The notes below the pieces were generated by a model, which worked only from the letters and a program-made list of their open reading frames with translations, did no database searches and was not told the origin of the DNA. From Zancudomyces culisetae HAW-14-8 (lineage: Eukaryota > Fungi > Kickxellomycota): a stretch of 64,000 bases of DNA. Within the stretch, counting starts at the first letter, position 1; each line of letters starts with the position of its first letter. Below are positions 176-56,463 of the stretch, one piece after another. The stretch spans positions 1 through 64,000 of the forward strand of contig JBNJNM010000016.1 of the NCBI GenBank assembly GCA_052426225.1, given 5' to 3'. The position numbers and the translations under genes were made by a program.

Positions 176-3100
176 TTGTCTCAGAAAACTGTAAAATATT
201 TTTTTTCGTTCATCACAAAAATCGAAAAAAAAAATTTACACGTTAAAAAAATCAAACAGAAAAATAAATCTTACCGCTTCGAAATCCAAAAAATCGACGG
301 CTCCATGATTCGCATTACCGACCTAAATAAATTGAAGTTGGAAAAAAAATTAAAGTGTATACTAAAAGTTGAAGAAAATAAAAATGAAAGAGAGAAAAAT
401 TTAAAAAACAAAAAAACAAAAAATTTATACCAAAAAAAAATTGAAAAAAAAAATGAAAAAATTAACCTAAAAATAATGACATACAACGTATGCTCAATAA
501 AAAATAAAAAATATGAATTAGATTATTTTTTAACCAAAGTAAATCCAACCATACTATGCTTGCAGGAGACCCACCTGCAGGAGAAGTCTGGGAGGATGAA
601 CATAAATGGCTACACATGTGTAGAGTCAAAAAGGCCGACACTAAAGACGGGTTCTGGTCTTCTAGTGGGGGTAAAAAAAAATATTGGCTGGCACATAGAG
701 GAGTATAAAAATAATAATACCTGGATGGCCGCAAAAATACATGGATATACAGAAAAGGAGCATAAAAGACTGGAAGTGATGGTTGTGAATGTACACACAC
801 CACACAAGCCCAGAGAAAGGACACAGATGAAGAAGGAAGTAGAAGACTTTATAAACAAAGAATACGGTAGAAACAGAGAAATAAAAATAATACTATGCGG
901 AGACTTCAACATGAGGACGAGCATCGTCACACCATGGTTGAAAAAACTCAGGTGTATAGTCAGGAGAGCCCCGACAAGGAAACGAAGCGGAACTAGGATA
1001 ACAAAAAAGCGACTGAAGAACACCATCGATCACATCTTTTATACCCCCACAGTAGGACAATTCGTGACAACAAAACTACACAAAAAAATTGACCTCAGTG
1101 ATCATCTGGCTATTACAGCCAACTTTACCATTGAGGAAATTAAACCAGAGCAGCAAAAAAAAATTGTCAACCGGAAACTATTGGACCAAAAATCAGAACT
1201 GTTCAGAACTCACAATAAATTTTCAATTTTGACATCTCTTAACGAAACTGACGAACTAATCAGTGAAACCGTTAATGAGACTAAAAAATTGATGGATAAG
1301 ATTACAAGAAAAAATAATCCAAACCCAAAAAATAATGAGAAATTGGCCGAAAAAAATTCCGAAGCCAAAAAAAATCAACATTTTTTAAGTAAAAAAACGC
1401 GAAAGATGATCAAACTTCGTTGCAAATTGTTCAAAAAAATGCTCAGAACTTGTGATGAACACGAGAAAGAGCTGTTTTATAATGATTACGTCCAGATGAA
1501 ATCTAAAACTTCAAAGCTAATAAAAAGTGACCAAAAATTACATAATAAAAAGGAGTTAGTGAAACTATGTGAACACATCAAAGGCAATGATGCCAAGACG
1601 ATGTGGAGATGGTTAAAAATGAGAGCTCTAAATAAAAAATCTGTGTTTAATAACGGAGGAGTCCTGGATGAATCAGGAAGGGAGATAACAGAGGAGGCAG
1701 AAAAACTCAAAGTATGGATAAAACATTTCTACAAGCTATCGAAGAATGAAAACTCAGCATTAAACACAATCCCAGAAGAAAGAGAGGAGGAAGTGGACTA
1801 CTTCAGAGAATGCGACGAAGAACCAACATGGACAGAAGTTAAAGAAGCGCTAAAAGAAACTCCGAGAAACAAAGCAGCGGGTGAAGATGGCATTCCGAGC
1901 GAAATCTGGAAATTTATACAGAGCGATGAAGATCCAGAATCGGAACTTGCAGTACTTTTATTAACCATAATTAAAAAATTCTGGAATAATCCAAAGTTAA
2001 ACAGTGAAAACAATACCAGCGTAATCGTTCCTATTTTCAAAAAAGGAAACACTAAAGACCCAAACAATTATAGGGGGATTTCGCTAATCCCAACCATAAC
2101 CAAACTTATAGCCAAAATAGTCGCTAATAAATTAAGATTAATAGATAATAGACATATATTATTAGCAAAAGAGCAAGCGGGATTCAGGACACTGGAGGAA
2201 TGCGTAGCTCAAGCCACAGCGCTATACGAAATTATAAAAAGGCGAAAAATCAATAATACAAAAACCATAATTTGTTTTATTGATTTTGAAAAAGCCTACG
2301 ACAAAGTGCAACACAATTTATTATTCAAAAAATTAAAAATGAACAAAATTAATGGTAAATTACTGGCAGTAATTAAAGAACTCTATAATAACGCAAAAAT
2401 AAAAGTAAGGGTAGGAAATGGATTATCGGAGGCGATGAACTTCGAAAGAGGTGTTCGCCAAGGATGCCCAGCCTCACCAATGCTTTTTGATATTTTTATC
2501 AACGATATATTTGAAGGAATGGAGGGAATAGAAGTACCAGGAATTCAAGAAAAAATTCCGGGACTACTATTTGCAGACGATACAGTTTTATTGTCAGACA
2601 CCCCAGAACAGATGCAAGAAGCTCTTAACATGATGCAGCAATGGTGTCAGAAGTGGGACATGAAGGTGAATGCTAGCAAGAGTGCGATTATGACAGTTGA
2701 AGCAGTGAATAGAACAAGCGACGAAAATAACAATAATATTGAAATTACGATTCCAGAATACTTTTTGGGAAGTGCAAAAGTACCAGAAGTAGATGAATAT
2801 AAATACTTGGGTGTTATATTCAATAAATATTGGAATAACAAGCTACACATACAGGAGAGGAAAGAAAAAGTACAAAGAGCAACCATGAGCAACTACTATC
2901 TACTCAAAGACAGAAATACACCGCTGTTGATGAAAAAGATGGTAATTAGGTCGATAGTCATTGCGGTCGCTGGGTATGGAGGTGAAATGTTCGGCATGTC
3001 TGAAGCAAGGGTAAAACCGATACAGCAAGCCGTGGACAACGCGATAAGAATAGCCATGGGAGTGGGCAGATCGACATGTATGAGGAGATTGCGAGAAGAA

Positions 3101-3922
3101 TTAAATATAACAGATATTTACAGTAGAACGACCAGAGCTAGAGACAGAGCATTCCACAAATGGAGTGGCATGAAAACATGGATAGCAGATTTAATACAGA
3201 ACCCCTTCAAACACTCGAAGGACACTTGGGTCACAGGGTACACAAGGTGGTCTAACAGATTCAACAGGATCAAGATTGATAATGTACCAACCGGAGAGAT
3301 AAGAAAAACCAAAGAGACACTCGAGATAAACAACAGACTGAAAGACAAGTCGAATATTACAAAGTGGATAAAGGAAGTTGGAGCAGGCCGACAAAGGAAC
3401 TGGGTCGACTTACAAGCGGCCTTTCCACAGTACATGAAACACATTCTTTTCGTAGGTCGAATTCGAATAGGCCAATTTTGGACCGCCACGAGATTAGCAA
3501 ATTCGGGGTTTATAGATCCAGATTACAAAGCCAAATGTCCGTTCTGTAAGAAAGAAGAAAAAGAAACAGTTGAACATTACCTATTAGATTGCAGCAGATG
3601 GGACGAAATTAGGAATGATTTACTTACCGAATTTATAGATTTTTATAGTTCTTTTTTATCTAGCACGATTTCCGAGTGTGTTGAGCTTCGCAGGAAAATC
3701 GTGGGTAAACTCCTGGGGGAGGAGTTAAAGCTCAAACTACCTGGGATTCTTCGGGATCCAAACGCCACTTGCGTTAGAGCAGTGGTTTCCACAGCCCGGT
3801 TTCTTAACGAGACCTTTTTACCTCGCTACCTAGTGTTGAAAGACATTAGTGTAGTCCCACTCCCCTTGAACCAATGCCCATCGGGTACGGAGACTCTAGA
3901 GAGTCGAAGGGGGATAGGATGA
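176..3922 (+). CDS. LINE ORF2: apurinic endonuclease + reverse transcriptase + C-terminal CCHC knuckle
   Basis: APE motifs TYNV, LCLQET, GDFN, IDHI, SDH. RT motifs YRGISL, QAGFR, FIDFEKAYDKV, GVRQGCPASPMLF, LFADD, YKYLG. Knuckle CPFC-x8-H-x4-C. Frame is open from 77; first ATG is at 305, so the true start is uncertain. Confidence 0.95.
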   Translation: MSQKTVKYFFSFITKIEKKNLHVKKIKQKNKSYRFEIQKIDGSMIRITDLNKLKLEKKLKCILKVEENKNEREKNLKNKKTKNLYQKKIEKKNEKINLKIMTYNVCSIKNKKYELDYFLTKVNPTILCLQETHLQEKSGRMNINGYTCVESKRPTLKTGSGLLVGVKKNIGWHIEEYKNNNTWMAAKIHGYTEKEHKRLEVMVVNVHTPHKPRERTQMKKEVEDFINKEYGRNREIKIILCGDFNMRTSIVTPWLKKLRCIVRRAPTRKRSGTRITKKRLKNTIDHIFYTPTVGQFVTTKLHKKIDLSDHLAITANFTIEEIKPEQQKKIVNRKLLDQKSELFRTHNKFSILTSLNETDELISETVNETKKLMDKITRKNNPNPKNNEKLAEKNSEAKKNQHFLSKKTRKMIKLRCKLFKKMLRTCDEHEKELFYNDYVQMKSKTSKLIKSDQKLHNKKELVKLCEHIKGNDAKTMWRWLKMRALNKKSVFNNGGVLDESGREITEEAEKLKVWIKHFYKLSKNENSALNTIPEEREEEVDYFRECDEEPTWTEVKEALKETPRNKAAGEDGIPSEIWKFIQSDEDPESELAVLLLTIIKKFWNNPKLNSENNTSVIVPIFKKGNTKDPNNYRGISLIPTITKLIAKIVANKLRLIDNRHILLAKEQAGFRTLEECVAQATALYEIIKRRKINNTKTIICFIDFEKAYDKVQHNLLFKKLKMNKINGKLLAVIKELYNNAKIKVRVGNGLSEAMNFERGVRQGCPASPMLFDIFINDIFEGMEGIEVPGIQEKIPGLLFADDTVLLSDTPEQMQEALNMMQQWCQKWDMKVNASKSAIMTVEAVNRTSDENNNNIEITIPEYFLGSAKVPEVDEYKYLGVIFNKYWNNKLHIQERKEKVQRATMSNYYLLKDRNTPLLMKKMVIRSIVIAVAGYGGEMFGMSEARVKPIQQAVDNAIRIAMGVGRSTCMRRLREELNITDIYSRTTRARDRAFHKWSGMKTWIADLIQNPFKHSKDTWVTGYTRWSNRFNRIKIDNVPTGEIRKTKETLEINNRLKDKSNITKWIKEVGAGRQRNWVDLQAAFPQYMKHILFVGRIRIGQFWTATRLANSGFIDPDYKAKCPFCKKEEKETVEHYLLDCSRWDEIRNDLLTEFIDFYSSFLSSTISECVELRRKIVGKLLGEELKLKLPGILRDPNATCVRAVVSTARFLNETFLPRYLVLKDISVVPLPLNQCPSGTETLESRRGIG

Positions 3923-4140
3923 GTTTAGATTATAGATTGTTTTTAATTGTTTATAGGAACTGTTTATTTTCTAAATAAATTTTTTTTTCTACCGAAAAAA
4001 AAAAAAAATGAACACACCCCCTCCTCTTGGAATCCTGGTATATCCCAGATATATAAACCATTCCTATCCTCAAGTTGCAAAACACATTTGTATAATTCGC
4101 ATTTATTTTTTTCACTGAGCGGAAACGAGATAATATAAAC

Positions 4141-43242: not shown

Positions 43243-44253
43243 ATGGATCTGAAGAGCCTTATTTCTTTGCTGCTCTTTCAACTTTTTGTGGTAAATGGGG
43301 ATCAGCAAGTAAAAAGAGATAACTCCAGTGAATCAATCAGTAAATTCGACTTGACGTCCAACCAGCGGGTTGTTAATGGAGTGCCAGCCCTTATAAACGA
43401 GTTTCCCTACGCCGTTTTCATATATATCGACTTGGGAAGTTCAGGCGAGGTTTGTACAGGATCATTAATCTCTGACTCTGTGGTTGTTACCGCAGCACAC
43501 TGTCTATTAAAAGACTTGAAAGAGCCTTATTCACCATCAAAATTTCTTGTCAGCGCGGGAAGTATAAAAAGCATTGATACGAATACAAACAGATTCAAAG
43601 TAAAAGCAACATATTCTCACCCAAAGTTTAATAAAAATTCTCTAGCGAATGACATTGGTTTACTTGTACTTTCATCACCCGTTCCCAGCAGTATTGCGAC
43701 TCCAGTTTCAATTTATGACGACGTTGTGGGGGATGGGATGAACGTTACTGCTGCGGGTTGGGGAGTTACTTCAAACAACGCCAATGCCAGCGCATCCAAG
43801 GTTTTAAATAAGGTTCCCCTCATTGTTTCCTCTTCTAGTACGTGTAAGACGCTTAACCCATTTTGGAAAAATAATAACGACTACAGTATATGTACAGTAA
43901 ATGTTAAAAACCAGGATACGTGTTACGGAGATTCAGGTGGGCCACTGACATACATAGAAGACGGTGCTCATTTACTAGTTGGTCTGACAAGTATGGGGAA
44001 TGCACCTGGAGATGATACAACATCCTCGTTATGTGGAGTGAATGGCGGCGCAGCTTATTACACACACGTGTTTTATTTTATTGACTGGATATCCCAGACA
44101 ACAGGGATCAAAAAGGAGGATCTTTTGGATAAAACATCACGATCTAACCTCCAACCGCAGACTTCTGCTGCGACTCGGAAAGGATCACAAGTTTTCTTGC
44201 CTATTTCGTTCTCTTTATTATTCATTGCTTTTACTTTACTGCTATTTATGTAG
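43243..44253 (+). CDS. Secreted trypsin-like serine protease (S1A) with predicted GPI/TM anchor
   Basis: Signal peptide, R|VVNG activation site, TAAHC, NDIGLL, DTCYGDSGGP (Asp189 equivalent), hydrophobic C-terminal tail. Confidence 0.93.
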   Translation: MDLKSLISLLLFQLFVVNGDQQVKRDNSSESISKFDLTSNQRVVNGVPALINEFPYAVFIYIDLGSSGEVCTGSLISDSVVVTAAHCLLKDLKEPYSPSKFLVSAGSIKSIDTNTNRFKVKATYSHPKFNKNSLANDIGLLVLSSPVPSSIATPVSIYDDVVGDGMNVTAAGWGVTSNNANASASKVLNKVPLIVSSSSTCKTLNPFWKNNNDYSICTVNVKNQDTCYGDSGGPLTYIEDGAHLLVGLTSMGNAPGDDTTSSLCGVNGGAAYYTHVFYFIDWISQTTGIKKEDLLDKTSRSNLQPQTSAATRKGSQVFLPISFSLLFIAFTLLLFM

Positions 44254-44355: not shown

Positions 44356-47300
44356 CTATTTAGCCACTGAAAGAGCTACAACTTGCATACAGTCAAAGAC
44401 AATGTTCAGCTCTATCGTGTTGATTCCAATACGCTCAACCAGTTCTGCCAACTTGTTATAAAATTTTACAGAAGCAGCTATATAGGTGTCATCGCTGGCT
44501 ATGTCCTCAATCTCAATGTCAATTAGAGGCGCTGCAGCTCCTTTACTCCAAAGTTCCACATTGGAACCGTGTTGATCATTAAAACTTGTTATAGCTTTTA
44601 TTGTTGCTTCTTTTGCGCACCATAGCATTGTAAAGCCTGATGCGATAGAGGATTGAGTCTTGCAATACTCTATTTCCTTTTTAGTAAAGTTTCGGGTGAT
44701 AAAGTTTTCATTTTCCACATTTAGCGAGGATACTGGTTCAATATCAATACCAATACCACATATCTGCTTTTTATCAATGTTCTTTATAATTTTATCAAGT
44801 GCAAGAACTGTATTATTTATAATCAAGTCATTGATAGATCCAGACTCGGGTTCGGTTATCTGGTCAAATCTGTTGAACGAATAAGTCTCAGATACCGGAT
44901 CAAACGAAACTCTAGCATTGGGATTCATATATACTAGCTCTTCCATTTCCTTGGAAAACGGAGGATCGGACTTTATTTTGACATGCTTTTTGAGCCCAGT
45001 TAAAGTGTTTTGGTAATATCTGTTAGCTTTGATCTGCCTTTGATTCCGTTTTTTCAAATATGACGCGTATTCGTGTCTATCTAGTGACGCTAGCAGATAA
45101 TCTGGATGCACAACAATCATTTCACCGCAATCTTTAGACTTTCCATATGATCTTAATATTCCTGCCTTAACCATGGGTCTCTTGTAGGATTCGTATGGGA
45201 AAAAAGTAAAGGTGTAGTCTTTATAATCGTTGGAAATGTTGTCAGAAATTCTATTCCCAGGAATGATCCCAGTGTTAATAGATTGGATAAGCCCAGTCAG
45301 CTCGATAACTGAAGATGCGCTTTTTGTGTGTCCAATAAGCCCCTTTTGTGAAACAACGGGGCAAATATTGCCAGGTGTTCTTCCCAAATAGTTAAACTGA
45401 ATATCTGCTATTTTTAGCTCCATATGGTCCATACGACTTATTGAACTCGAATACATGCTAACAACATCGATATCATTAATATCCAACCCAAAACAAGATA
45501 GAGCCCCTCTAATAGGAGAAATGGTTTTATCACTTCTCCAAAACTCATTTGTCCAGAAGCTTATTGCCTCTTTTCTTAATCTGTTTTCTTGATTTGATAT
45601 GCTATTGATAACTTCTGTAATCAAATCCAGCTTACTTTGTGAGGTATTGCTGCTCAAAAATAAATCTCTGTCAGATACGAGACCATTTGATCCAAAATTA
45701 TCAGTTTGGAAATATTCATCAAATCCCGTAGATGTAATGTAAGAGTACTCTTCGGTTGCCCATTTTTTGATCTCCAAAAGTCTTTTTTCTAGCTGGTCTT
45801 TCCGATAGCTGATATCTAAAATAGGGTTGGGCATATTTGTAATGGGATCACATTCACGAGAATTGGATAGTACTCCGTACCCAACATATTCCCTATAGGT
45901 AGCATAACTTGATGTGTTGGTCTGGCAAAAGGCAATTATTGCATATATTGGCACACCCATTTCTAGTGCAGTCCTGGCAGACATTAGAACCATAGTTGAT
46001 GAGCCGATACTTTCAACAAAACCATCGCTAGTATTTGTAAATGGCCGAAAATGATCTTTTACAGTTCTTCCCGCCTTTTGTTCTTTAGATGCCGTCACTA
46101 GCTCTTTATTAAGGAAAAGTTCGAGGTTCATTTCCTCGTCTACATCATCTTGACCCCCAGCAATCATCACCTTTGCCTTGCCCATCTGAATACTCTCAAC
46201 AGCAATCGAAACAGATGCTAATCCATTGGAATAGGATGTGCTTGGAATTTTTATAGGCCCGGCGGACGACAATAGCAGCAAGTTTATCCATCCCGACATT
46301 GATGAGGGAAATGTCTCTTGTAATATATCCTTTTGTACATCTTCGTCTCTTAGTCTCCCCAGACATGTTTCTAAAAATGACTCAACACCACCCACAAATG
46401 AGCCCACCGAATTTCCAACTTCAGTTAGATGTACGTATTTGTAGAATTCGTATGGATCCTCAATTCCAGCCCGCATTAACGAATCACATGTGGAAACTAG
46501 GGTCAGGAGAGTCAAATAATCTACTTGGTTAATGGTATCTGTGTCTATCCCATATCTTTTTGCCGACCATCCCTTTGGAAGTAATCCTACAGTGTTAGAG
46601 TCGATTTTAGTTGCCTTGGGAAAGTACAGTTTTGCTCCGGGCAAGAACTGTACAGACCACGTTTCGTCACCATTGCTCCAAATCTTTACCTTATCTTCAT
46701 TTCGCAGTTTAAAGTGTTCGGCTTCCACCTGTGTCGTAATTATCGGATGCATTTTTTCTTGGATTTCGATTTCCTGTATAGTGACTCGTTCATCTGGATT
46801 GTATCCACGCATTAACTCTGGGTCAATGTTTCTTATTCTGGAGTTTTGAACAATCTTCATCTCATAAATACTCCTAATTCTTTTCTCTTCAATTGGTTGT
46901 TTGGTTTCACAGTCTATCCATCCATTATAATAGCGACCATCCTTTTGCTTTCCGTTGAAATATTCTATATATCCCATGATCCAAGCCAAGACAATGCAGC
47001 TTTCTGTAGATAAGTTTTCGTCAACTTCAAAATCCCATCTAGTTTCTGCAGTACCGTACGGAGTAACTTCACCATATCCAACTAAAACCACTGTTTTGTC
47101 CAGATCCAGCATATTCTTCATGTAGTTTAGATTTTCAAGCTCATCATACGTTTTGGTTTTAGGAAATTCCAGCCAAAGCTTAGACTGTGGGATAGCTTGG
47201 GTGGTTTTATATAGACGTTCCACGTTTTCTCCCTCAATCATATTGAAATCAAATGAGGTTTCCGCAACAATTTTCTTTTGCAACGAGCTCTGAAACATTA

Positions 47301-50300
47301 AGTTGTTTCTAATCTTAACGCATCTATCATTAAAGTCCATCATAATCCCGAACCCACCGCTAATGTCAACATACATGGGGCCGCTGTTTGATACTTGTGA
47401 CAATCGCGGATGCAAGAGACCCATCACGTTAAGTGCAATCTCATCAGGCGAAAACGTCTTTCCTCCTTGTTTCTCCATTTCTTCCGCAACAATATCATTT
47501 TGGTTCATCAGTGATGTACCTCTTGCCCAACCCACAACTACACCAATTATATTTATGATTCCGCCCCATGATTCAGCTCTCCACTTATCAAATAACGTTT
47601 CAAGTCCGATTTTACTTTCGGCGTACAGACCATCGTATCCAAAGCCACCATGATTTAGTGATAATGGTACCACTACTCTGGTAGGTCTGAAAACACTATT
47701 TAGCTCGTTCTTATTCTTTACAATTCTGCCAACCATCCTTATAATATTGATAAGCATTGTACGATGACTCAATTCCGAGTAGGAATCTATGCAAGTGATA
47801 TCCCTATTTATTTCTGACATCGCTGCAAACGGGATAAATAGATCCAAATCTAACCCAAGCCCTCCACTTGCCTTTGGTTTGTAAATAAAATCAACCAAGT
47901 TGTTAATATCAGTTTGTGAAGATTGATTAAACGGAACAACAGTTAGTGACGATTTTTTAGACCCATGCTCCTTATAAACCTTTTCATACATCCTTATATT
48001 ATCGTATTTGAAATTCGATGTTGTCGCAATGACGTTTGCACCAGATACTAGTAATGCCTTTACAAGAGATAAACCTATAGAATTCTTCCCACAACCTGTA
48101 ACCAAAACGTTCTTACCACTATATGAAATACCATGTTTTGAAATATCCAATATAGCAGCCATATACACTGAAGTCGAATCAGGGTCATAGTTCCATATTT
48201 CATGTGAAAACCTGGTTCGAAGGTGAAGAAACGGAATTCTGTCTTTTATGAGAATTTGTTTGGAAAATTGTTGAAAATCGTCAAACTCTCTCATATCTTT
48301 TTCAAGTTGACTAGTTTTATCGAACTGATCAGTGTGTGCTTCCTTTTTTCTAGTTGCCAGTTCTGACAGCAAGGCTGAAATTCTATTAAGGTCCAATGTC
48401 TTTTCACCACCACCACTATTACTATTTATAAGATCAACAATTTCTTCAACCTTTAAGCCACTCGATATATCACTATCTTGGGTTCGACTAGCCAGATTAG
48501 GTATGCCCTTTACCATTGATTTCAAATAATCAACACAGCTATTTACTCCGGCTCTTGGAGTTTCTGTATATTGAATTTCCCCCTTGTTGTTAACAGTTGT
48601 CCTTGGACCCACAAATTTCTCCAAACCCTTATACAATGGATCTAATTCAACATTTGCCTCGCAAACATTTACTAGATCCCTCAATAGCTCAATCTTTGCT
48701 GCCAACTCCTTATTTTCATGGGTTAGACTGTTTTCTTGTTTTAATATCTGCAATTTGTATTTTAAAAAGTCAACCAACTGAATGCTAGAACAGTTTACAA
48801 GATGTCTGAACTCGTCCATTAGAGTTTCCTTTATTTTTTCGCTATTCATTTCCACCATTCTATAGAAAAGCGAGTCTGCCCGTGCCAAAGACCAGTTCCA
48901 GTATGAGTCAAAGACTCTAACTTTTTCTTCCTCAAAAATCGATTTTATTCCTTCAATAAACACCTCTCCCTGCTCACTAAGTAAATAATCAATCTGAGCT
49001 TGAACTTCACCCAGTTTGTTTGTTGTTTCCTCCAACGCTTCGTGGCTCTTGCTATAGCTTACACCGAAATAATCGTTCAAAGATTCAAGATGAGAATTCA
49101 ATAATGTATCTTGCTTTTCCACTAGACTGGTGAATTCTTTTGAATTTATTACTGTGGTACTTTTTCCTGCACTAGAAGACACACTTAGTTGAGAATATTG
49201 TATTCCAAATATTTTAGCATATTGATTGGCAACTATTTCCAACCACGAATTCATGTCCTTTTCATTTGCCAATCGGTTTTCAGGCTCAAATGTAGTTCCC
49301 AGCAAAAGCAAACAGTCAGCACGCAATGGACCTAGTCCGTACTTTTTGTTTAGCATTTCCTTGATCTTGGGAATGGTAAATCCACCCGGCATCTTTGAGT
49401 TTACCAACTTTGACACCCTTACAGATGAAAATGGTCCCAGTCCGCCAGAAGAGTTATTAAGTTGGCCAAAAAGCTCAACCAGTGGCATTTCCTCAGCCTT
49501 ATCAGGTAGTTGATTTTGAAACTCTTTTTGTAAATCACTGATTATTTCATTTTGCATTGCTGATTTGCCATTGACTAGGTCCTTAATAGATTTGGAATCG
49601 GAAATATCAATGTAACTTTTTTTCAGCTTTTGAGCAACTATAGAGGTAATGATTTCACGAGCTGTGATTTTTACATCTTCTATTTGTGCAGCTACTCCTT
49701 GAGATATATTCCCATCGCCAGAACTGTTTTCGAGAGCAGGGCTGTAATGTAGATCAGTTGGTGTTGCTGTTGGTGTTGCTGTTTCAGCTGGTTTGGTGAC
49801 TTGTTCACTTGAACGAGACGTTGAAGTCTGTGTGTCTGCAGCTTCACTTTGTTTGTCGGTAGAGAGCTTTTTACTGGATATTGGAAGAGAGGCGTTTGAT
49901 TCTTGAGGTTCGTTGGATTCATTTTGTCTGTTGGCGTGATAAATGGATTCTTTATCGCTAATACAATGTAGTATAGTACGCTGGATTCCCTCCAAATCGT
50001 CTTGATCCTTGAACTTGGCATGTATCGTTCTTGTTGCCATTCCAACCAACACGGAACTGGGCCCGACCTCAATAGCTTGTTCAATATTACAGTCTCCGAA
50101 TATGGTATTTTGAGTTTCAATCCATTGAACAGGGCTGGCAAATTGATATGACAACAGTTCAACCAAAAGAATGTGGCCCAGTCGTTGTTTCTCATGTCGA
50201 TCAGCCAAATGTGATTCGTCCCAATGATCAATGACCTCTCTGAGGTGCGGTGAATGGGTAGCACTGTAGACCATTTCAAAGTATGCTTTCGATACAGCAA

Positions 50301-53300
50301 ACATCTTTCCTGTTACATTTGGAATATATCTACGTTCTAGCTGTTCAACTACTACATTTTCCTTTGTGATTGATTTGTGTAGGAATTGTCGCATCAGTGG
50401 TACCCCCGACAATAGAAAAGAGGAATGGAATGGCACATCAATCCCAGGAATAGGAATGGTACATTTGCTTCGAGTTAGGGATATATACCCATTACTAGCA
50501 TTGTACTTTTTATCAGATTTAGCAATTATTTGGCAAATTGTCTTTTCTACAAACGCACTAAATTCTTGCATCATTTCTGTATCAACTATATCTTCAGACT
50601 CGGTATCATGACTTTTCTTAAATATACCATTTAATTGTTCTTTCTGGTAAAATAGGACATCTGTTACCTGGGAAAATATGTCCAGTAATACCAGTTCACC
50701 AGCAATCACATACTGCCAGTTATAAATGTTGTAGTTTACAATCTCCATTAAACCAGGTCTTTTTTCTTTAATCATATCAACAACCTTTTCAAACATCATT
50801 TCCATGAATTTTGAAGCTATTCGGCTTGGGTTGAAGGCAACCATTCCGTACTTACTGGCTCCCTCCTTATTGCGTTCTACAGATAACTGCATGGCCAGTC
50901 CGCGATAAAACACCAGTTCAATCATTGTTTCTACTTTTACCATTCCACCCATAACCAACAATGCGCAGAATTCTCCAAGTGAATGGCCAGCAAATACAAG
51001 ATCTTTGTGCACAAGGTTGTTGTTCAACATATCCTGCGATGCCGCCATTGCAAAAAGCATAATTGAGGGCTGGGTAAACTGTGTTGCATTGAGAAGACCT
51101 GTTGGCGACCTGAATGTATAGCTTTCACTGCGCTCGTTGATTTCTGGAAAAATACTTATATACTCGGATTCGCCCTGTTTATTGGTTATTTCGTATCTCA
51201 TATTTATATACCTGGTTCTAATTTCCTTACCCCTTGAACCCCCAAAATATATAGTCTTTTCGCTTGGGTTCAGTCTGATTATCTCCAACAACGAGAATCC
51301 ATATAGATCGTCCATATACTTGTCAACCGAATTCCAGATTTCTTTCACAGCTTCCGAGCCGTTGTACAGATCCACACCCATATTAACCACTTGCGAACCT
51401 TGCCCCGTAAACAGGTAAGCTGTTTTTGGTGGATTTATTTCTGCAACACCCTCCAGTACTTTGTTGCCAATGCTGGTGAATGTTTCAACTTTGATTATTT
51501 TTCGTCCATTGCGCATGCCTACATGTGTTAATTTGGTTTCTAAGGTGTCTCCTGGTAAGACCATGTCCAAAAAGTTCACTTCATACACTGCTACTCGTTC
51601 TGGATGGCCCTCTGCAGCGCATGTTTCCACAACTCTTCTGGTCGCAGCTGAAGTCCACATTCCATGAACAATTGTTCCAGGAAGTCCACTAAGATTGGCA
51701 AAGAAGATGTTTGTGTGAATAGGATTGAGATCGGCTGTAACCAGTGCGAATTCCTTATTTGAAATCCGAGTGTGGCTGATTGCCAAATGTCTCAAATCTT
51801 TGGGAATTGCTGAATATCCTCCATCTTCAAAATATTGTGGTTCGTCAAACGGCTCTCCGTTTCGCTCTAGATATGCCAGTACAGGATTACCATATGCATG
51901 TCCGCTTTCATAATCTACACATCCAACCTCAACAGGAAGGGTGTTTTGAGATAAGACCTCGACCGATCCAACGGTTTTTACGCTGCTAAACTCCTTGATG
52001 CCTTTATATCTCACACTGCTAACCAAATTAAAGACAAGTACTGAACCAACTTGAACCAACCGATCATAGTTTTCTCCGGCTATTAACCATTCTTTACTTT
52101 GCAACACCTTCAAATCCTCTTCTGTGTTTAGCGATATTTTTGCCTTGGTTTCGTCTTTTATGCTAAAAGTATTTTGGTAGTCATTGAATTTACCTCTGAA
52201 CAGCGAGCTTGTAACAACTTTGTAATGGGGTACTCCGTCTTTCATTAAAATTCCCTCGGAGGTTGTCATCTTCCCCATTGGGCTGTTTGTAACTGATAGT
52301 AATCTTGCAGTAGCACTTAAATTATCGCTGGTTTTGAGCAGTTGGTAATCACAAAGTGATTCCAGTTTTACCGAGTAGTGTACAATGTCAAGCATGTTTG
52401 CATCTGCGCAATTGTGTGATGCAGTACAAATTGCTCCCCACAGAATACTGAATACAAAATCCATCGGAATATATGAATAGCCTTCTATGTTGTTGTATAC
52501 ATACTGATGCGATGTATTATCCACCACTTGACAGAACTTGGCTACATCTTTTGGGCTAACAATAACACTATTTTGAATCACAGTTCTTTCTCCAGTCTCT
52601 TCAACGTGCATGGTATATTGCTCCGGATGATGCACCCATAGCTGTTTATAAAATTCGCTCACCCGTGAATTCCTCTCGTTTACAATTTCATGAATCAGAG
52701 CGTATGGGGTCTCTGGTTTATATGAAAACTTGAAAAAAACACTATAAGTATTAGCGTTTGGCTTGTCGTTCATAGTGATTGTGATTGTTTTATCCTTACA
52801 TTCATACAATATCTTTATACTTTTGAAATGATGTTCATTTTCAACACACAGCTCCGTAGGATATCCACTATCATCAAAGTGTATCGTGGTTGTGGTTTTG
52901 GGAATAGGGGCTAGTGTAGATCTAATATTATTTTCTGTAACGTCTTCTCCCCTAACTATTGACCGCGAAAAGAGCAAAGCAGACAGCCACGACTGCTTGC
53001 CACCACAAAGAACGCTATACCACTCGTCACTTGTAGGCAAACGATCTGTATCATCCTGAAGTAGTTTAAATGTCTTTTTATTTGCCATCGAAACACACTC
53101 AATCGTGCCCGGAAGAGTTTTAGTTGTGTTTACACCAATCTCAACTGAGTATTCGATCTCAGGTACTCTGGTTTCATCACCTTCGTACATTGTATCCAAA
53201 AGAGAACGAATGTGACTTTGATTGATACCATTCAAGATATCAGAAACTGGTTCATCAACCACGTTTGCATACGAAACGGCCACTGGTCCCTGTAAAATGC

Positions 53301-56300
53301 ATACTTTCTGTGCATCTTGACCCACTACAGAGTCCAAATATTCTGACTGCCACAAACTGTCCTTTTTAAACCAGGAATCAAGGTTTTCATCCAAAATGGG
53401 AATGAATGGTACTGGCTTTCTGCCAGGTTCTTGACATATGTTTAAGAAAAAATGAGAGTCTATCACTGATATTGCTGTTTTAGATGCGTTTGGATGCATC
53501 TCCAATATAGTATTTACAATCTCAGTTGGTTGAGAGAGTTGTGCACTTGATTGCAGTATCATTTCATGTGGTATATAGCTAAATCTCTCTTCTATTTTTC
53601 TTAAAAAGTCTGCTACTATTTCTGTATATGAGGAATGAATCCATTTATCATTTTTCTGATCAAACATCAAATCAACCATCCTAAATATAACTTCTGAGTA
53701 TGTCATCTCTTCCAAATCGCACACATCTCCGTTTTCTTTACGTCCAAACCAAGGCCTTTGATAATCCTTATTGAGCCGCCCAATGATATACTCCTTTTTC
53801 TGCTTTAAAATCTTTTTTCTCTCCTCGACAGGCAGACTAAAGATGGTTTTATCAAGCTCATCCCAGAGCATCACCGCTCTACTAGCAATCATATGGATTG
53901 GCTGGCCGAGTTCAGAAATCACAGAGATGATCCCACCAGCTGGTCCATTATATGTGTCTGCCCACTTTATATCCGGAACACCGGGTGTGTCCACTATCAA
54001 CTGTTTCACTTTATAACTTGTAGGACATTCTTTTGCAACCATCATCCTCGACCCAAGAAGAATACCATCAAATGGCATTCTAGGTCTTTCATAAGCCATA
54101 CTCCAGTCACCAGTAATATACGGCAATGTGTCTTTATCGCCACCAAACCCTGATCCCGCGACCAAAACAACGTTTTCGCACATCCTAATCTCGGCATATG
54201 TTTCTAAAATTGGCTGGTGGAAATCTTCGGAGCTATGGTGCCCACCGCCACGCCCGCCTGTCCACTGAAGAATAATATTCATTTTGGGGTTATTTTTAGC
54301 CACTAAAACAACCTGCCTTATAGATTCAGCATTGCCTGGTTTAAAAGAAATATGCTTTATTCCGCATTGAATCATTCCTTCAATTAATTCGGTTGATGTT
54401 TCCAAACTAGGAACACCTGCCGAAATACAAACTCCATCGATTGGAGCACCCTCGAGTCTCATTCTGTTTAGTAGCGGTAGCTGAAGACTTGCCATTCTTG
54501 CGTTCAAGAAAATTACATTTACTGTGATCCCATCACCTGGTCCAATGTTTCTTCGTATTTTTTCAACCTCCTCTCGTAGTGATGCCTCAGAATAATGACC
54601 TCCACCAGCAAGCTCAATATGATAGCCAGAATTAAGAACAGACGATACAAAATCAGACCCAATAGTCGATGGTGTCATACCAGCAACCATGATATGGGGC
54701 TTTCCTAGAAGTCGTGTCATGCGTGTGTCAAGCATAAGGCTTCCGGTGTACTTATTTTGCACTATTTTTGGTCCAAACTCCTTTTCCCAGTTTTGACTAT
54801 ATGTCACAGAATTAGGATCGTTGTTTAACAAATCTACAAGCGTTTTTGTACCTTCAGGTATGATTTTATTGGGACTTGCAAAAATGACTTGAACACCAGT
54901 GCCCAGTTTGTTGTTTGCGGTCAATGAGCCAATTCCTGAAATTCCACCAGGACCAAAGTCAACAATGTGTGTAATGTCTTTTAACTCTGTTGCCTTAACC
55001 CAATTTACTTGTTCAATACATATCTCGTTGATAAGTATATATGTTAAATCTTTATCTTTGGTATCGTACATGGACCCGCATACAGATTTTACTGGAATAT
55101 TCATAAATTTGCTTTGAAATAGAAATCCTTCCGTTTTTATTCTACGATGTATTTGGTCGATATGCTTCCTCATCAAATTGCTGTGTAGCGGATTAGGATT
55201 CTGTATATACTCGAATTTAATTTCATCAGTCAAGTTTACACAATTTTTATTTTTTAGGTTCGAGATATGAGATTTAGAGAATTCTTTGAGCTTGAGAACA
55301 AACAAACGCAAAATATGATCAGGACCTGTAAGCTGACACACACTATTTGATTTAATAAACGAAACGCATACTCTTTCGTCTGGGTCAAGATCTTTGTTGA
55401 CCTGGTTAACTATTGTGTTTAGCGATTTTATTGGAATATTCATAACTTCTAATTGTATAGTCGGCATACCAGAAGGGTTTGTAGCTGTACGACTTTTAAC
55501 GGAATCTCTGCTGCTGTGGATAGAGTTTTCAATATCAGCGTGGAGTCCCACGTAGTATAAAAAACCCAAGGCGTTTTTCGAGTTGTGAATGAAGCTATTA
55601 TGATCGTTGGAACATGATATAGCTACAGCCACTACGGTACCACAGCCAAATCCTGCTAGACTATCAAATCTTCTTGTAACCCAACTATAACTTCTTTTCG
55701 ATACTCTACAAACCAGGTAGTATAATGACAGACTTACAAGACCCGAAAGTATCATACTCGCCGCTATTGAATGTTGAAAACCAAGTTCTTCAAAGGTTTG
55801 ACATTCCTTTTTTTTCAAAAGATCTAAAATATTGATTCTGAACTTTGCCAGGCCTTTTTTATATTCATCGCTTGAAATTCCAAGTACGAGCTCCGAAAGA
55901 GTTGTTACATAGTCGTTTAATAGCGAATTATAAGTCCCTAGCAAATTTTCTAGCACTTGTAAACTCACATCGGGTGAGATATATCCATCAAATATCCCTG
56001 CTAGTTTTAGTTTTTTTTTTATTGAAAGCTCGAAAATCGCACTCAAGTGCTCATCGCTTTTTTCTGGTTGTATATTTTCCTTGACTGTAGCACTTTCTAT
56101 AATGTCAACACAAGTAAAGTAGCTATTTAGAATGTTCTTTCTAGAATTATCGTCGACTTTGCTGACAGCAACATGAATATCGTTGTTATTCAAATATTCA
56201 TTATCAATAACATCAAGCAAGAACCGAAGTACTCCTATCTGTTCGGGTTCAATATTGGCTTTATCGATCGAGTGAAGGTTAATATAATGGTGTATGAATT

Positions 56301-56463
56301 TAGTAACTAAGTCGAGCTGAACAATTTTGGAGCTTTTATTCTCTGCTAATATTGCTGGGTCTATACTTGGTTCAAAACTTCCTGATGTGTGCTTTAAAGT
56401 TGCCTCATATTCCTGTGGAACGGATAGTGTACACAAATCTTTATACAGGTAGACTTTGCTCAT
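44356..56463 (-). CDS. Single-chain fungal type I fatty-acid-synthase homologue (AT-ER-DH-MPT-ACP-KR-KS-PPT), ~4035 aa, with degenerate AT and KS active sites
   Basis: ATG at 56463. ER GGRGGGHHS, DH DLNPIH..GTIVHG, MPT AGHSLGE, ACP GKSAMQNE, KR TGCGKNSIG..YAESK, PPT GIDIE..AKEA. KS reads PSTSYSNG and SMYSSS; AT reads GFGCG. Confidence 0.95.
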   Translation of the reverse strand: MSKVYLYKDLCTLSVPQEYEATLKHTSGSFEPSIDPAILAENKSSKIVQLDLVTKFIHHYINLHSIDKANIEPEQIGVLRFLLDVIDNEYLNNNDIHVAVSKVDDNSRKNILNSYFTCVDIIESATVKENIQPEKSDEHLSAIFELSIKKKLKLAGIFDGYISPDVSLQVLENLLGTYNSLLNDYVTTLSELVLGISSDEYKKGLAKFRINILDLLKKKECQTFEELGFQHSIAASMILSGLVSLSLYYLVCRVSKRSYSWVTRRFDSLAGFGCGTVVAVAISCSNDHNSFIHNSKNALGFLYYVGLHADIENSIHSSRDSVKSRTATNPSGMPTIQLEVMNIPIKSLNTIVNQVNKDLDPDERVCVSFIKSNSVCQLTGPDHILRLFVLKLKEFSKSHISNLKNKNCVNLTDEIKFEYIQNPNPLHSNLMRKHIDQIHRRIKTEGFLFQSKFMNIPVKSVCGSMYDTKDKDLTYILINEICIEQVNWVKATELKDITHIVDFGPGGISGIGSLTANNKLGTGVQVIFASPNKIIPEGTKTLVDLLNNDPNSVTYSQNWEKEFGPKIVQNKYTGSLMLDTRMTRLLGKPHIMVAGMTPSTIGSDFVSSVLNSGYHIELAGGGHYSEASLREEVEKIRRNIGPGDGITVNVIFLNARMASLQLPLLNRMRLEGAPIDGVCISAGVPSLETSTELIEGMIQCGIKHISFKPGNAESIRQVVLVAKNNPKMNIILQWTGGRGGGHHSSEDFHQPILETYAEIRMCENVVLVAGSGFGGDKDTLPYITGDWSMAYERPRMPFDGILLGSRMMVAKECPTSYKVKQLIVDTPGVPDIKWADTYNGPAGGIISVISELGQPIHMIASRAVMLWDELDKTIFSLPVEERKKILKQKKEYIIGRLNKDYQRPWFGRKENGDVCDLEEMTYSEVIFRMVDLMFDQKNDKWIHSSYTEIVADFLRKIEERFSYIPHEMILQSSAQLSQPTEIVNTILEMHPNASKTAISVIDSHFFLNICQEPGRKPVPFIPILDENLDSWFKKDSLWQSEYLDSVVGQDAQKVCILQGPVAVSYANVVDEPVSDILNGINQSHIRSLLDTMYEGDETRVPEIEYSVEIGVNTTKTLPGTIECVSMANKKTFKLLQDDTDRLPTSDEWYSVLCGGKQSWLSALLFSRSIVRGEDVTENNIRSTLAPIPKTTTTIHFDDSGYPTELCVENEHHFKSIKILYECKDKTITITMNDKPNANTYSVFFKFSYKPETPYALIHEIVNERNSRVSEFYKQLWVHHPEQYTMHVEETGERTVIQNSVIVSPKDVAKFCQVVDNTSHQYVYNNIEGYSYIPMDFVFSILWGAICTASHNCADANMLDIVHYSVKLESLCDYQLLKTSDNLSATARLLSVTNSPMGKMTTSEGILMKDGVPHYKVVTSSLFRGKFNDYQNTFSIKDETKAKISLNTEEDLKVLQSKEWLIAGENYDRLVQVGSVLVFNLVSSVRYKGIKEFSSVKTVGSVEVLSQNTLPVEVGCVDYESGHAYGNPVLAYLERNGEPFDEPQYFEDGGYSAIPKDLRHLAISHTRISNKEFALVTADLNPIHTNIFFANLSGLPGTIVHGMWTSAATRRVVETCAAEGHPERVAVYEVNFLDMVLPGDTLETKLTHVGMRNGRKIIKVETFTSIGNKVLEGVAEINPPKTAYLFTGQGSQVVNMGVDLYNGSEAVKEIWNSVDKYMDDLYGFSLLEIIRLNPSEKTIYFGGSRGKEIRTRYINMRYEITNKQGESEYISIFPEINERSESYTFRSPTGLLNATQFTQPSIMLFAMAASQDMLNNNLVHKDLVFAGHSLGEFCALLVMGGMVKVETMIELVFYRGLAMQLSVERNKEGASKYGMVAFNPSRIASKFMEMMFEKVVDMIKEKRPGLMEIVNYNIYNWQYVIAGELVLLDIFSQVTDVLFYQKEQLNGIFKKSHDTESEDIVDTEMMQEFSAFVEKTICQIIAKSDKKYNASNGYISLTRSKCTIPIPGIDVPFHSSFLLSGVPLMRQFLHKSITKENVVVEQLERRYIPNVTGKMFAVSKAYFEMVYSATHSPHLREVIDHWDESHLADRHEKQRLGHILLVELLSYQFASPVQWIETQNTIFGDCNIEQAIEVGPSSVLVGMATRTIHAKFKDQDDLEGIQRTILHCISDKESIYHANRQNESNEPQESNASLPISSKKLSTDKQSEAADTQTSTSRSSEQVTKPAETATPTATPTDLHYSPALENSSGDGNISQGVAAQIEDVKITAREIITSIVAQKLKKSYIDISDSKSIKDLVNGKSAMQNEIISDLQKEFQNQLPDKAEEMPLVELFGQLNNSSGGLGPFSSVRVSKLVNSKMPGGFTIPKIKEMLNKKYGLGPLRADCLLLLGTTFEPENRLANEKDMNSWLEIVANQYAKIFGIQYSQLSVSSSAGKSTTVINSKEFTSLVEKQDTLLNSHLESLNDYFGVSYSKSHEALEETTNKLGEVQAQIDYLLSEQGEVFIEGIKSIFEEEKVRVFDSYWNWSLARADSLFYRMVEMNSEKIKETLMDEFRHLVNCSSIQLVDFLKYKLQILKQENSLTHENKELAAKIELLRDLVNVCEANVELDPLYKGLEKFVGPRTTVNNKGEIQYTETPRAGVNSCVDYLKSMVKGIPNLASRTQDSDISSGLKVEEIVDLINSNSGGGEKTLDLNRISALLSELATRKKEAHTDQFDKTSQLEKDMREFDDFQQFSKQILIKDRIPFLHLRTRFSHEIWNYDPDSTSVYMAAILDISKHGISYSGKNVLVTGCGKNSIGLSLVKALLVSGANVIATTSNFKYDNIRMYEKVYKEHGSKKSSLTVVPFNQSSQTDINNLVDFIYKPKASGGLGLDLDLFIPFAAMSEINRDITCIDSYSELSHRTMLINIIRMVGRIVKNKNELNSVFRPTRVVVPLSLNHGGFGYDGLYAESKIGLETLFDKWRAESWGGIINIIGVVVGWARGTSLMNQNDIVAEEMEKQGGKTFSPDEIALNVMGLLHPRLSQVSNSGPMYVDISGGFGIMMDFNDRCVKIRNNLMFQSSLQKKIVAETSFDFNMIEGENVERLYKTTQAIPQSKLWLEFPKTKTYDELENLNYMKNMLDLDKTVVLVGYGEVTPYGTAETRWDFEVDENLSTESCIVLAWIMGYIEYFNGKQKDGRYYNGWIDCETKQPIEEKRIRSIYEMKIVQNSRIRNIDPELMRGYNPDERVTIQEIEIQEKMHPIITTQVEAEHFKLRNEDKVKIWSNGDETWSVQFLPGAKLYFPKATKIDSNTVGLLPKGWSAKRYGIDTDTINQVDYLTLLTLVSTCDSLMRAGIEDPYEFYKYVHLTEVGNSVGSFVGGVESFLETCLGRLRDEDVQKDILQETFPSSMSGWINLLLLSSAGPIKIPSTSYSNGLASVSIAVESIQMGKAKVMIAGGQDDVDEEMNLELFLNKELVTASKEQKAGRTVKDHFRPFTNTSDGFVESIGSSTMVLMSARTALEMGVPIYAIIAFCQTNTSSYATYREYVGYGVLSNSRECDPITNMPNPILDISYRKDQLEKRLLEIKKWATEEYSYITSTGFDEYFQTDNFGSNGLVSDRDLFLSSNTSQSKLDLITEVINSISNQENRLRKEAISFWTNEFWRSDKTISPIRGALSCFGLDINDIDVVSMYSSSISRMDHMELKIADIQFNYLGRTPGNICPVVSQKGLIGHTKSASSVIELTGLIQSINTGIIPGNRISDNISNDYKDYTFTFFPYESYKRPMVKAGILRSYGKSKDCGEMIVVHPDYLLASLDRHEYASYLKKRNQRQIKANRYYQNTLTGLKKHVKIKSDPPFSKEMEELVYMNPNARVSFDPVSETYSFNRFDQITEPESGSINDLIINNTVLALDKIIKNIDKKQICGIGIDIEPVSSLNVENENFITRNFTKKEIEYCKTQSSIASGFTMLWCAKEATIKAITSFNDQHGSNVELWSKGAAAPLIDIEIEDIASDDTYIAASVKFYNKLAELVERIGINTIELNIVFDCMQVVALSVAK

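What the first reader, a model, noticed from the sequence alone, without database searches (positions are those of the whole stretch)
44356..56463. Condensation-dead fatty acid synthase: an intact 4035-aa megasynthase with inactivated KS and AT but conserved reductive and carrier domains
Seen, compared with remembered yeast Fas1/Fas2 motifs: the KS nucleophile loop PVGACATA reads PSTSYSNG (Cys->Tyr, 46231-33). SFHGTST reads SMYSSSI (His->Tyr, 45451-53) and SFGFGQ reads SYGKSK; only the second His (KGLIGH) remains. The AT motif GHSQG reads GFGCG. ER (GGGHH), DH (D..PIH), MPT (GHSLGE), the ACP Ser (49561-63) and KR (Y..SK) are intact, and the 12.1-kb ORF has no stop or frameshift. Known: KS Cys/His are essential for condensation, and the KS dimer also forms the structural wheel of the fungal FAS barrel. 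Inference: selection keeps a FAS that cannot prime or elongate. It could be (a) a non-catalytic subunit of a hetero-hexamer with an active paralogue, analogous to the type II PKS chain-length factor; (b) a stand-alone acyl-tailoring barrel (MPT load, KR/DH/ER reduce, MPT release); or (c) a regulator. I know of no described equivalent.
Basis: partly seen in the sequence, partly recalled or inferred. Interest (0 to 1): 0.9.

Follow-up and report, generated by a model that had tools for sequence, protein, structure and literature searches.

The report
Fatty acid synthase split between paralogues
In an insect-gut fungus, a giant fat-making enzyme was duplicated and each copy lost exactly the working surfaces the other kept, so the 'dead' copy is most likely the essential partner half of a mixed complex, and the same split arose separately in a second genus.

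Summary
Observation confirmed: a 4035-aa single-chain fungal FAS whose KS (Cys->Tyr, His->Tyr) and AT are dead. The organism is Zancudomyces culisetae, and an independent assembly has the same dead KS. The genome also holds a canonical FAS and a third FAS (contig C11) that is ~99% identical in DNA over ER-DH-MPT-ACP and complementary elsewhere. C11 keeps the KS catalytic and entrance residues; the window copy keeps the ACP-docking residues that the non-catalytic KS protomer supplies. The two-protomer PPT site is split too: the window copy keeps Asp/Glu/Lys, C11 keeps Pro and Ser-His. Smittium mucronatum has a KS-dead/KS-live pair with the same split (9 of 11 published docking residues, none opposite), probably of independent origin (AU p=0.028). 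Furculomyces and S. simulii have one unsplit gene. Best reading: an obligate hetero-oligomeric FAS whose KS dimer works like KS/chain-length factor (0.75). This is inferred from sequence only; no expression, structure or biochemistry could be tested. I found no paper describing it. The scan reached the same reading earlier on this gene's other haplotype (s1-639021); I saw that only after my own analysis.

The parts
44356..56463 (-). Single-chain fungal type I FAS, KS-dead member of the Harpellales second FAS clade (FAS-B), 4035 aa
55006..56013 (-). Pseudo-AT domain (aa 151-486): Ser->Gly at 55645-47, GGQG lost at about 55987; not shared with C11
53625..55002 (-). Gene-converted tract 1 (ER), 99.3% identical in DNA to the C11 paralogue
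53455..53625 (-). 170-bp island (aa 947-1003, ER helical insert) that differs between the two paralogues inside the converted region
49189..53455 (-). Gene-converted tract 2 (rest of ER, DH, MPT, ACP), 99.3% identical to C11; MPT Ser 50980-82, DH His 51715-17, ACP Ser 49561-63 intact
48124..49188 (-). Dimerisation module / four-helix-bundle linker, 32-48% identical to C11; allelic pN/pS about 0.9
47179..48123 (-). KR domain, catalytic Ser 47659-61 and Tyr 47623-25 intact, 62% identical to C11, fully constrained without conversion
45064..47178 (-). Pseudo-KS: catalytic side lost (yeast numbering C1305->Y 46231-33, H1542->Y 45451-53, M1346->N, R1416-A1420 lost, G1250->F); partner-facing docking side kept (D1203 46537-39, Q1207, D1267, D1273 46327-29, Q1276, F1279 46309-11)
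44359..44772 (-). Half-site PPT: Mg/catalytic residues kept (Asp 44743-45, Glu 44608-10, Lys 44596-98); nucleotide-binding face lost (G-A-P loop at about 44479, Ser-His at about 44398, Gly at 44626)

Best explanation
The window protein (chain A) and the C11 paralogue (chain B) are the two subunits of an obligate hetero-oligomeric FAS that descends from one intact FAS-B gene. They pair through A:B KS dimers. B supplies the catalytic Cys/His/His and the pocket entrance; A supplies the surface on which the ACP docks and, probably, a wall of B's acyl channel, as a chain-length factor does. The KS dimer also brings together the two C-terminal PPT domains, which make one working site: Asp/Glu/Lys from A, Pro and Ser-His from B. 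Three such dimers would close a barrel with three KS sites instead of six, while KR, DH, ER, MPT and ACP stay active in both chains; gene conversion keeps the dome and ACP parts interchangeable. A's ACP is the one best placed to feed B's KS. The starter must come from B's AT in a mixed dome, or from acyl-CoA loaded through MPT. Shown: the sequences, the reciprocal losses, their recurrence in a second genus, purifying selection. From literature: PPT and KS sites are composite and the KS dimer dimerises PPT. Inferred: co-expression, binding, stoichiometry, activity, product. Whether the split is adaptive or a neutral ratchet of complementary loss is open.
For: (1) Three FAS loci; C11 shares ER-DH-MPT-ACP at 99.3% DNA identity and has intact AT and KS. 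(2) PPT: columns >=85% conserved that only the window copy keeps are G, D, E, R, N, W, E, K of the Mg face; those only C11 keeps are S, G, G, P, S, H of the nucleotide face. In V. cholerae AcpS, Asp8/Glu57/Lys61 come from one chain and Pro86/Ile110/Ser111/Asp112 from the neighbour (PMC3447402). TIGR00516 matches positions 2-65 of the window PPT and 66-120 of C11's. Yeast PPT is active only as a multimer and is dimerised by the KS dimer (PMC6972935). (3) KS: of 11 published ACP-contact residues at the pocket entrance, 9 split the same way in both species' pairs and none oppositely; unsplit FAS-B keeps both sets. D1273 is a same-chain contact, M1346 and P1419 are partner-chain contacts, and an ACP reaches the partner's Cys (19 A) rather than its own (35 A) (preprint 10.64898/2026.05.15.725316). 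For the set D1203/Q1207/D1273/Q1276/F1279 only the two live copies score 0/5 among 147 sequences; the next lowest is 3/5. Across conserved columns the two pairs agree 32 to 2 (Fisher p=4e-6). (4) The S. mucronatum pair: KS-dead with PPT, KS-live with PPT deleted; different substitutions; trees favour separate origins. (5) Synonymous sites are saturated against C11 (pS 0.72-0.78; pN 0.26-0.56) yet the frame is open; even 0.1 neutral changes per site predicts about 31 stops.
Against: No expression data (no run listed), no dimer model, no biochemistry. The geometry predicts that the AT should be expendable on the KS-live chain, but here it is dead on the KS-dead chain; mixed domes or MPT priming must be invoked. 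The AT-KS linkage crosses a 5.8-kb near-identical tract and rests on this assembly alone (two contigs agree). In S. mucronatum a strict heterodimer carries one PPT, which should be inactive as a monomer. The genome has other PPTases (canonical FAS, an AcpS-type and an Sfp-type), and Kickxellales FAS lack a PPT altogether, so PPT loss alone needs no partner. 24 of the 32 agreeing columns are losses in the dead copy, expected from any KS death; Q1276 and F1279 were picked after the scan. The chain assignment of docking residues comes from an unreviewed modelling preprint, and the PPT assignment from a bacterial AcpS. The four-helix-bundle linker has pN/pS about 0.9. Only two split pairs are known.
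Confidence: 0.75

Rival explanations
1. Transient activator or assembly factor: A meets B only during assembly to complete the PPT site and load phosphopantetheine; the mature working barrel is made of B alone.
For: Priming happens in a KS-organised dimer before the barrel closes (PMC6972935). In S. mucronatum the dead copy carries the only PPT of the pair.
Against: Both live copies have lost the same-chain ACP-docking residues needed at condensation. The dead copies keep KR, DH, ER and MPT under full constraint, also in S. mucronatum where conversion is no longer recent.
Confidence: 0.09
2. Stand-alone acyl-tailoring barrel: a homo-hexamer of A that loads acyl-CoA by MPT, reduces it with KR/DH/ER and releases it.
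For: All those sites and the ACP Ser are intact; KR is constrained independently of conversion.
Against: A's PPT lacks the nucleotide-binding face, so a homo-oligomer should not self-prime. It does not explain why A keeps KS docking residues or why B lost exactly those.
Confidence: 0.06
3. A pairs with the canonical FAS (C21) as a regulator or dominant-negative subunit.
For: Parts of A's KS are closer to the canonical enzyme than to C11 (58% against 44% over aa 3301-3400).
Against: That closeness reflects C11's loss of the docking helix. The canonical FAS lacks nothing, is only about 47% identical in the dome domains, and conversion runs between A and C11.
Confidence: 0.04
4. Decaying duplicate whose middle is held in place by gene conversion.
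For: AT is heavily decayed (branch length 8.1); linker pN/pS about 0.9; no expression shown.
Against: 2096 non-converted codons stay open at saturated dS in two complete haplotypes, and the C-terminal 1765 codons in a third allele; KR+KS+PPT alleles show 6 synonymous and 4 non-synonymous changes; the losses are patterned, reciprocal and repeated.
Confidence: 0.03

Closest known systems
Single-chain fungal type I FAS (non-Dikarya homohexamer; yeast alpha6-beta6 as structural model)
   Same: Complete domain order AT-ER-DH-MPT-ACP-KR-KS-PPT; E=0 to the yeast, Thermomyces and Candida FAS chains.
   Different: Dead KS and AT, half PPT; predicted to work only with a complementary full-length paralogue. 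Known FAS splits cut the chain into alpha and beta (e.g. PMC9503022); here both chains stay full length and the composite sites are divided.
KS/chain-length-factor heterodimer of type II PKS (and the KS-CLF didomain of PUFA synthases, from memory)
   Same: A KS homologue without active-site residues pairs with a live KS, and the channel lies at their junction (PMC7949117).
   Different: Embedded in a 4000-aa type I megasynthase with its own ACP and reductive domains; arose from a fungal FAS duplication, not from bacterial CLF. It works like a CLF but is not one.
Sfp-type (group II) phosphopantetheinyl transferase
   Same: Two AcpS-like units, one giving Ser-His and one giving Asp/Glu/Lys, make one site (PMC2148441).
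   Different: In Sfp the halves are fused in one chain; here they end two different megasynthase chains.
Unsplit Harpellales FAS-B (Furculomyces PVU85583.1, S. angustum PWA00267.1, S. simulii PVU88844.1)
   Same: Same clade, 100/100 support.
   Different: One gene with all sites and both docking sets intact; the likely ancestral state.
Non-elongating KS0 and decarboxylating KSQ domains of modular PKS (from memory, not tested)
   Same: KS fold that cannot condense.
   Different: KS0 keeps the Cys and KSQ keeps both His; here Cys and the first His are both Tyr, so neither transacylation nor decarboxylation is expected.

Membership tests
Fungal type I FAS (fold family) | Full domain set and order | tested here: met
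   Pfam and PDB matches along the whole chain
Fungal type I FAS (self-sufficient enzyme) | KS Cys-His-His triad | tested here: not met
   Tyr, Tyr, His
Fungal type I FAS (self-sufficient enzyme) | AT GHSQG serine | tested here: not met
   GFGCG; 32 of 86 conserved columns kept
Fungal type I FAS (self-sufficient enzyme) | ER, DH, MPT, KR catalytic residues and ACP serine | tested here: met
Fungal type I FAS (self-sufficient enzyme) | Complete PPT able to self-prime | tested here: not met
   Pro loop and Ser-His lost; activity itself untested
Harpellales FAS-B clade | Groups with Furculomyces and Smittium second FAS genes | tested here: met
   KS, KR and middle-region trees
Chain-length factor (works-like) | KS homologue lacking the catalytic Cys | tested here: met
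Chain-length factor (works-like) | Keeps the surfaces that serve the partner's site while the partner loses them | tested here: met
   with chain assignment
Chain-length factor (works-like) | Physical heterodimer with a live KS | not testable with these tools
   no complex prediction or experiment available
Chain-length factor (works-like) | Controls product chain length | not testable with these tools
   F1279 is kept; its role in length control is shown in yeast (PMC5353594), not here
Type II PKS CLF (membership) | Stand-alone protein of the bacterial CLF lineage | tested here: not met
   domain of a fungal FAS chain nested among Kickxellomycotina FAS
KSQ decarboxylase | Cys->Gln with both His kept | tested here: not met
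   Cys->Tyr, first His->Tyr
Pseudogene | Stops or frameshifts, dN/dS near 1 | tested here: not met
Pseudogene | Not expressed | not testable with these tools
   no sequencing run was listed

The most novel reading that the evidence does not exclude
A natural obligate A3B3 fatty acid synthase barrel in which the KS dimer has become a KS/CLF-type pair and the PPT an Sfp-type pair spread over two megasynthase chains, with the KS split evolved twice in Harpellales. In its strongest form the two reaction chambers are unequal: one condenses and, lacking a live AT, extends acyl-CoA primers loaded through MPT, so the barrel acts as a soluble elongase, for example on host or canonical-FAS fatty acids.
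Probability: 0.2. Interest if true: 0.92.

Novelty: new variant of a known kind. Interest (0 to 1): 0.8.

Why it matters
Fungal FAS is treated as a symmetric particle with six equal sets of sites. A natural hetero-barrel with three KS sites would be a ready-made test of old questions: which chain's KS an ACP feeds, whether the two chambers are independent, and whether the priming-competent PPT is a dimer built on the KS dimer. The sequences already sort the docking and PPT residues by protomer. It is also a clear case of a homomer turning into a heteromer by complementary loss in a multi-megadalton machine, with unsplit relatives and a second, probably independent, split for comparison. For engineering, it suggests how to build asymmetric FAS barrels with a changed ratio of elongating to releasing sites.

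Tried and rejected
Sequencing artefact: rejected (second haplotype and independent draft). C12 as a real fourth paralogue: rejected; C16 (78 kb) is collinear with C12 2.436-2.511 Mb at 93-99.5% from position 4003 to its end, so most likely an alternate haplotype. A second FAS-B paralogue in Furculomyces (P0382): rejected, same locus assembled twice with the same L30 neighbour. One origin of the two KS-dead genes: disfavoured (AU p=0.028 with the mixture model on the KS core), though an earlier plain-model test on a larger set did not reject it (p=0.30). Further KS-dead Harpellales fragments: none in a third protein search or in metagenome contigs. Biosynthetic cluster context: none; neighbours are a trypsin, Utp6, DnaJ and thiolase. 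Expression and read-level linkage: no run was listed. A single-sequence model of the PPT was too poor to use (pLDDT 57). Literature searches found no description; the Harpellales genome paper does not mention fatty acids. Two primary papers looked up by PMC id were not held, so the claim that the 1273-1290 helix lines the partner's channel rests on recall of FabB/FabF. The canonical C21 FAS was read across its frame break with X.

Full report
1. Observation. The minus strand of 44356-56463 is a single open frame of 4035 codons with the complete single-chain fungal FAS architecture. Against the genome's canonical FAS every residue claim holds at the stated coordinates: KS Cys->Tyr 46231-33, His->Tyr 45451-53, second His kept, FGFG loop destroyed, AT Ser->Gly 55645-47; ER, DH, MPT, KR and ACP residues are intact. 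The KS loop aligns without gaps, so no other Cys can stand in. The organism is Zancudomyces culisetae (Harpellales, an insect-gut fungus): the C-terminal half matches OMH83907.1 from an independent draft, which differs by 26 SNPs and has the same dead KS. A 99.4% identical copy on C12 is most likely the other haplotype. Only 3 of 380 FAS KS sites examined lack the Cys.

2. The genome has three FAS genes. C21 is canonical, with one frame break at a C run that is probably a read error. C11 is a third gene with intact AT and KS. C11 and the window gene are 99.3% identical in DNA over window 49189-53455 and 53625-55002 (ER, DH, MPT, ACP), but only 14-39% identical in protein over the N-terminus and AT, 62% in KR, 43% in KS and 23% in PPT. 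Outside the shared tract synonymous sites are saturated (pS 0.72-0.78) while pN is 0.26-0.56; neutral drift of only 0.1 changes per site would give about 31 stops in those 2096 codons, and there are none. So the duplication is old, the middle is homogenised by recent conversion, and the rest is under purifying selection. Both genes belong to a Harpellales-specific second FAS clade, here called FAS-B (100/100).

3. The PPT site is divided between the two copies. Among about 320 FAS PPT tails, the conserved columns kept only by the window copy are the G-x-D-x-E strand, R-N, W and the K-E-x-x-x-K helix residues; those kept only by C11 are the S-x-x-G helix face, the G-x-P loop and Ser-His. HMMs show the same: the AcpS model matches positions 2-65 of the window PPT and 66-120 of C11's. 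In V. cholerae AcpS each CoA is held between two chains: Asp8, Glu57 and Lys61 from one, Pro86, Ile110, Ser111 and Asp112 from the other (PMC3447402). Yeast FAS PPT is active only as a dimer or trimer and is dimerised by the KS dimer during assembly (PMC6972935). Inference: neither homodimer has a complete site, the heterodimer has one. This mirrors the fused halves of Sfp-type enzymes (PMC2148441).

4. The KS dimer is divided in the same way, in two genera. Smittium mucronatum has a FAS-B with a dead KS (Cys->Asn, His->Asp, His->Phe; OLY84576.1) and a complete PPT, plus a FAS-B with a live KS whose frame stops before the PPT (OLY81869.1). Furculomyces, S. angustum and S. simulii have one FAS-B with everything intact. 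Over 250 KS columns conserved in at least 90% of 140 FAS, the two pairs agree on which copy kept the residue in 32 of 34 informative columns (p=4e-6). Twenty-four are losses in the dead copy around its own pocket, which any KS death could give. The telling class is the 8 kept by both dead copies and lost by both live copies, including yeast D1203, D1273, Q1276 and F1279. An outside list exists: 11 yeast KS residues at the pocket entrance reported to touch the ACP (quoted in preprint 10.64898/2026.05.15.725316). Nine split identically in both pairs and none oppositely: E1139, M1346, R1416, S1417, P1419 and A1420 stay with the live copy; D1203 (only D->E in C11), D1267 and D1273 stay with the dead copy. 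The preprint assigns D1273 to the ACP's own chain and M1346 and P1419 to the partner chain, and measures 19 A from the ACP Ser to the partner's Cys against 35 A to its own in yeast 6TA1. The two live copies are the only sequences of 147 with none of D1203/Q1207/D1273/Q1276/F1279 (the last two were chosen after the scan). So the live copies look as crippled for homodimer function as the dead ones.

5. Origins. KS, KR and middle-region trees put the Smittium pair with the unsplit Furculomyces and S. simulii genes, apart from the Zancudomyces pair. Forcing the two dead copies together is rejected at p=0.028 with the mixture model, but not by an earlier plain model (p=0.30). Every catalytic substitution differs, and the PPT was lost by different routes. 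The species tree places Zancudomyces in the basal clade, apart from Smittium and Furculomyces (PMC5954228). Two independent splits are likely, not proven; conversion blurs the non-KS trees.

6. Mechanism. Most likely (0.75) the window protein A and C11 protein B form A:B KS dimers, prime their ACPs through one composite PPT site, and close into a barrel with three live KS sites. A's ACP docks on A's dead KS surface and delivers to B's Cys; KR, DH, ER and MPT of both chains stay in use. Shown: sequence pattern and selection. Taken from papers: composite sites and assembly order. Inferred: association, stoichiometry and activity. Two things do not fit neatly. First, the geometry would make the AT expendable on the KS-live chain, yet it is dead on A. 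Either domes are mixed so that B's AT serves A's ACP (which would also make sense of the dome-domain homogenisation, and of S. mucronatum keeping all dome sites in both copies), or primers enter as acyl-CoA through MPT, or the N-termini were exchanged across the 5.8-kb shared tract. Two contigs agree on the present linkage, and no reads were available to test it. Second, in S. mucronatum only the dead chain has a PPT, so priming there needs another arrangement; other PPTases exist, as in this genome and by necessity in Kickxellales, whose FAS lack the domain. The product is unknown. Both live copies carry Ala at yeast G1250, a position that shortens products when enlarged in yeast (PMC5353594), but this is only a hint.

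7. Comparison and novelty. It is a fungal type I FAS by fold, fails the test for a self-sufficient FAS, works like a chain-length factor without belonging to that family, and is neither KSQ nor a pseudogene. Literature searches found no natural hetero-oligomeric type I FAS of this kind, though most subscription papers are not searchable. I class it as a new variant of a known kind. An earlier agent of this scan reached the same overall reading on the C12 haplotype (s1-639021); my notes on the split predate that look-up, and it is not independent evidence.

8. Limits. No expression, reads, complex model or experiment. Interest 0.8.

Noticed in passing
G000:C21:1242942-1254907 (+), break near 1249008: The canonical FAS is split into two frames at a short C run near the end of MPT; probably a one-base read error, otherwise the only full housekeeping FAS would be broken.
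   Followed up: partly
G000:C16 (whole 78-kb contig) against C12:2435957-2510560: C16 is collinear with a stretch near the end of C12 at 93-99.5%; looks like an unmerged alternate haplotype, so findings here are duplicated on C12.
   Followed up: yes
window 53455-53625: A 170-bp island in the ER helical insert resists gene conversion between the two FAS-B paralogues although both flanks are 99% identical; may mark a chain-specific contact.
   Followed up: partly
window 48124-49188: Among three alleles this linker has 14 non-synonymous against 4 synonymous changes, while the same region of C11 has 1 against 7; relaxed or diversifying selection on one chain only.
   Followed up: partly
P0063, P0075, P0081, P0086, P0093, P0095 (Coemansia): A group of Kickxellales FAS paralogues has a live KS but substituted ER and DH catalytic His; they could make partly reduced, polyketide-like products.
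   Followed up: no
P0007-P0017 and other Kickxellales FAS: Coemansia, Kickxella and Martensiomyces FAS, housekeeping-like ones included, end without a PPT domain and are strongly expanded in copy number.
   Followed up: no
P0031, P0038 (Martensiomyces): FAS paralogues whose MPT serine motif is missing or replaced; may be further partial enzymes or gene-model errors.
   Followed up: no
P0259 / P0381 (Logan, unnamed): A divergent FAS alpha-type protein with KS Cys->Ala, His residues kept and the KR Tyr lost; organism unknown.
   Followed up: no
window 43243-44253 (+): Secreted-type trypsin gene whose stop lies about 100 bp from the FAS stop, tail to tail; same arrangement in the draft assembly.
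   Followed up: no
window 176-3922 (+): Long open non-LTR retrotransposon frame (endonuclease, reverse transcriptase, zinc finger) at the contig start; the first 4 kb do not match C12 at the collinear place.
   Followed up: no
G000:C7:908557-909035, C6:2500082, C12:363361: Stand-alone PPTases: one intron-split AcpS-type and an Sfp-type present in two near-identical copies.
   Followed up: partly
L013 21578-21796 and L016 19786-20092: Both S. mucronatum FAS-B genes have the same 220-bp element (87% identical) a few hundred bases downstream, at the contig ends; probably a common repeat.
   Followed up: no
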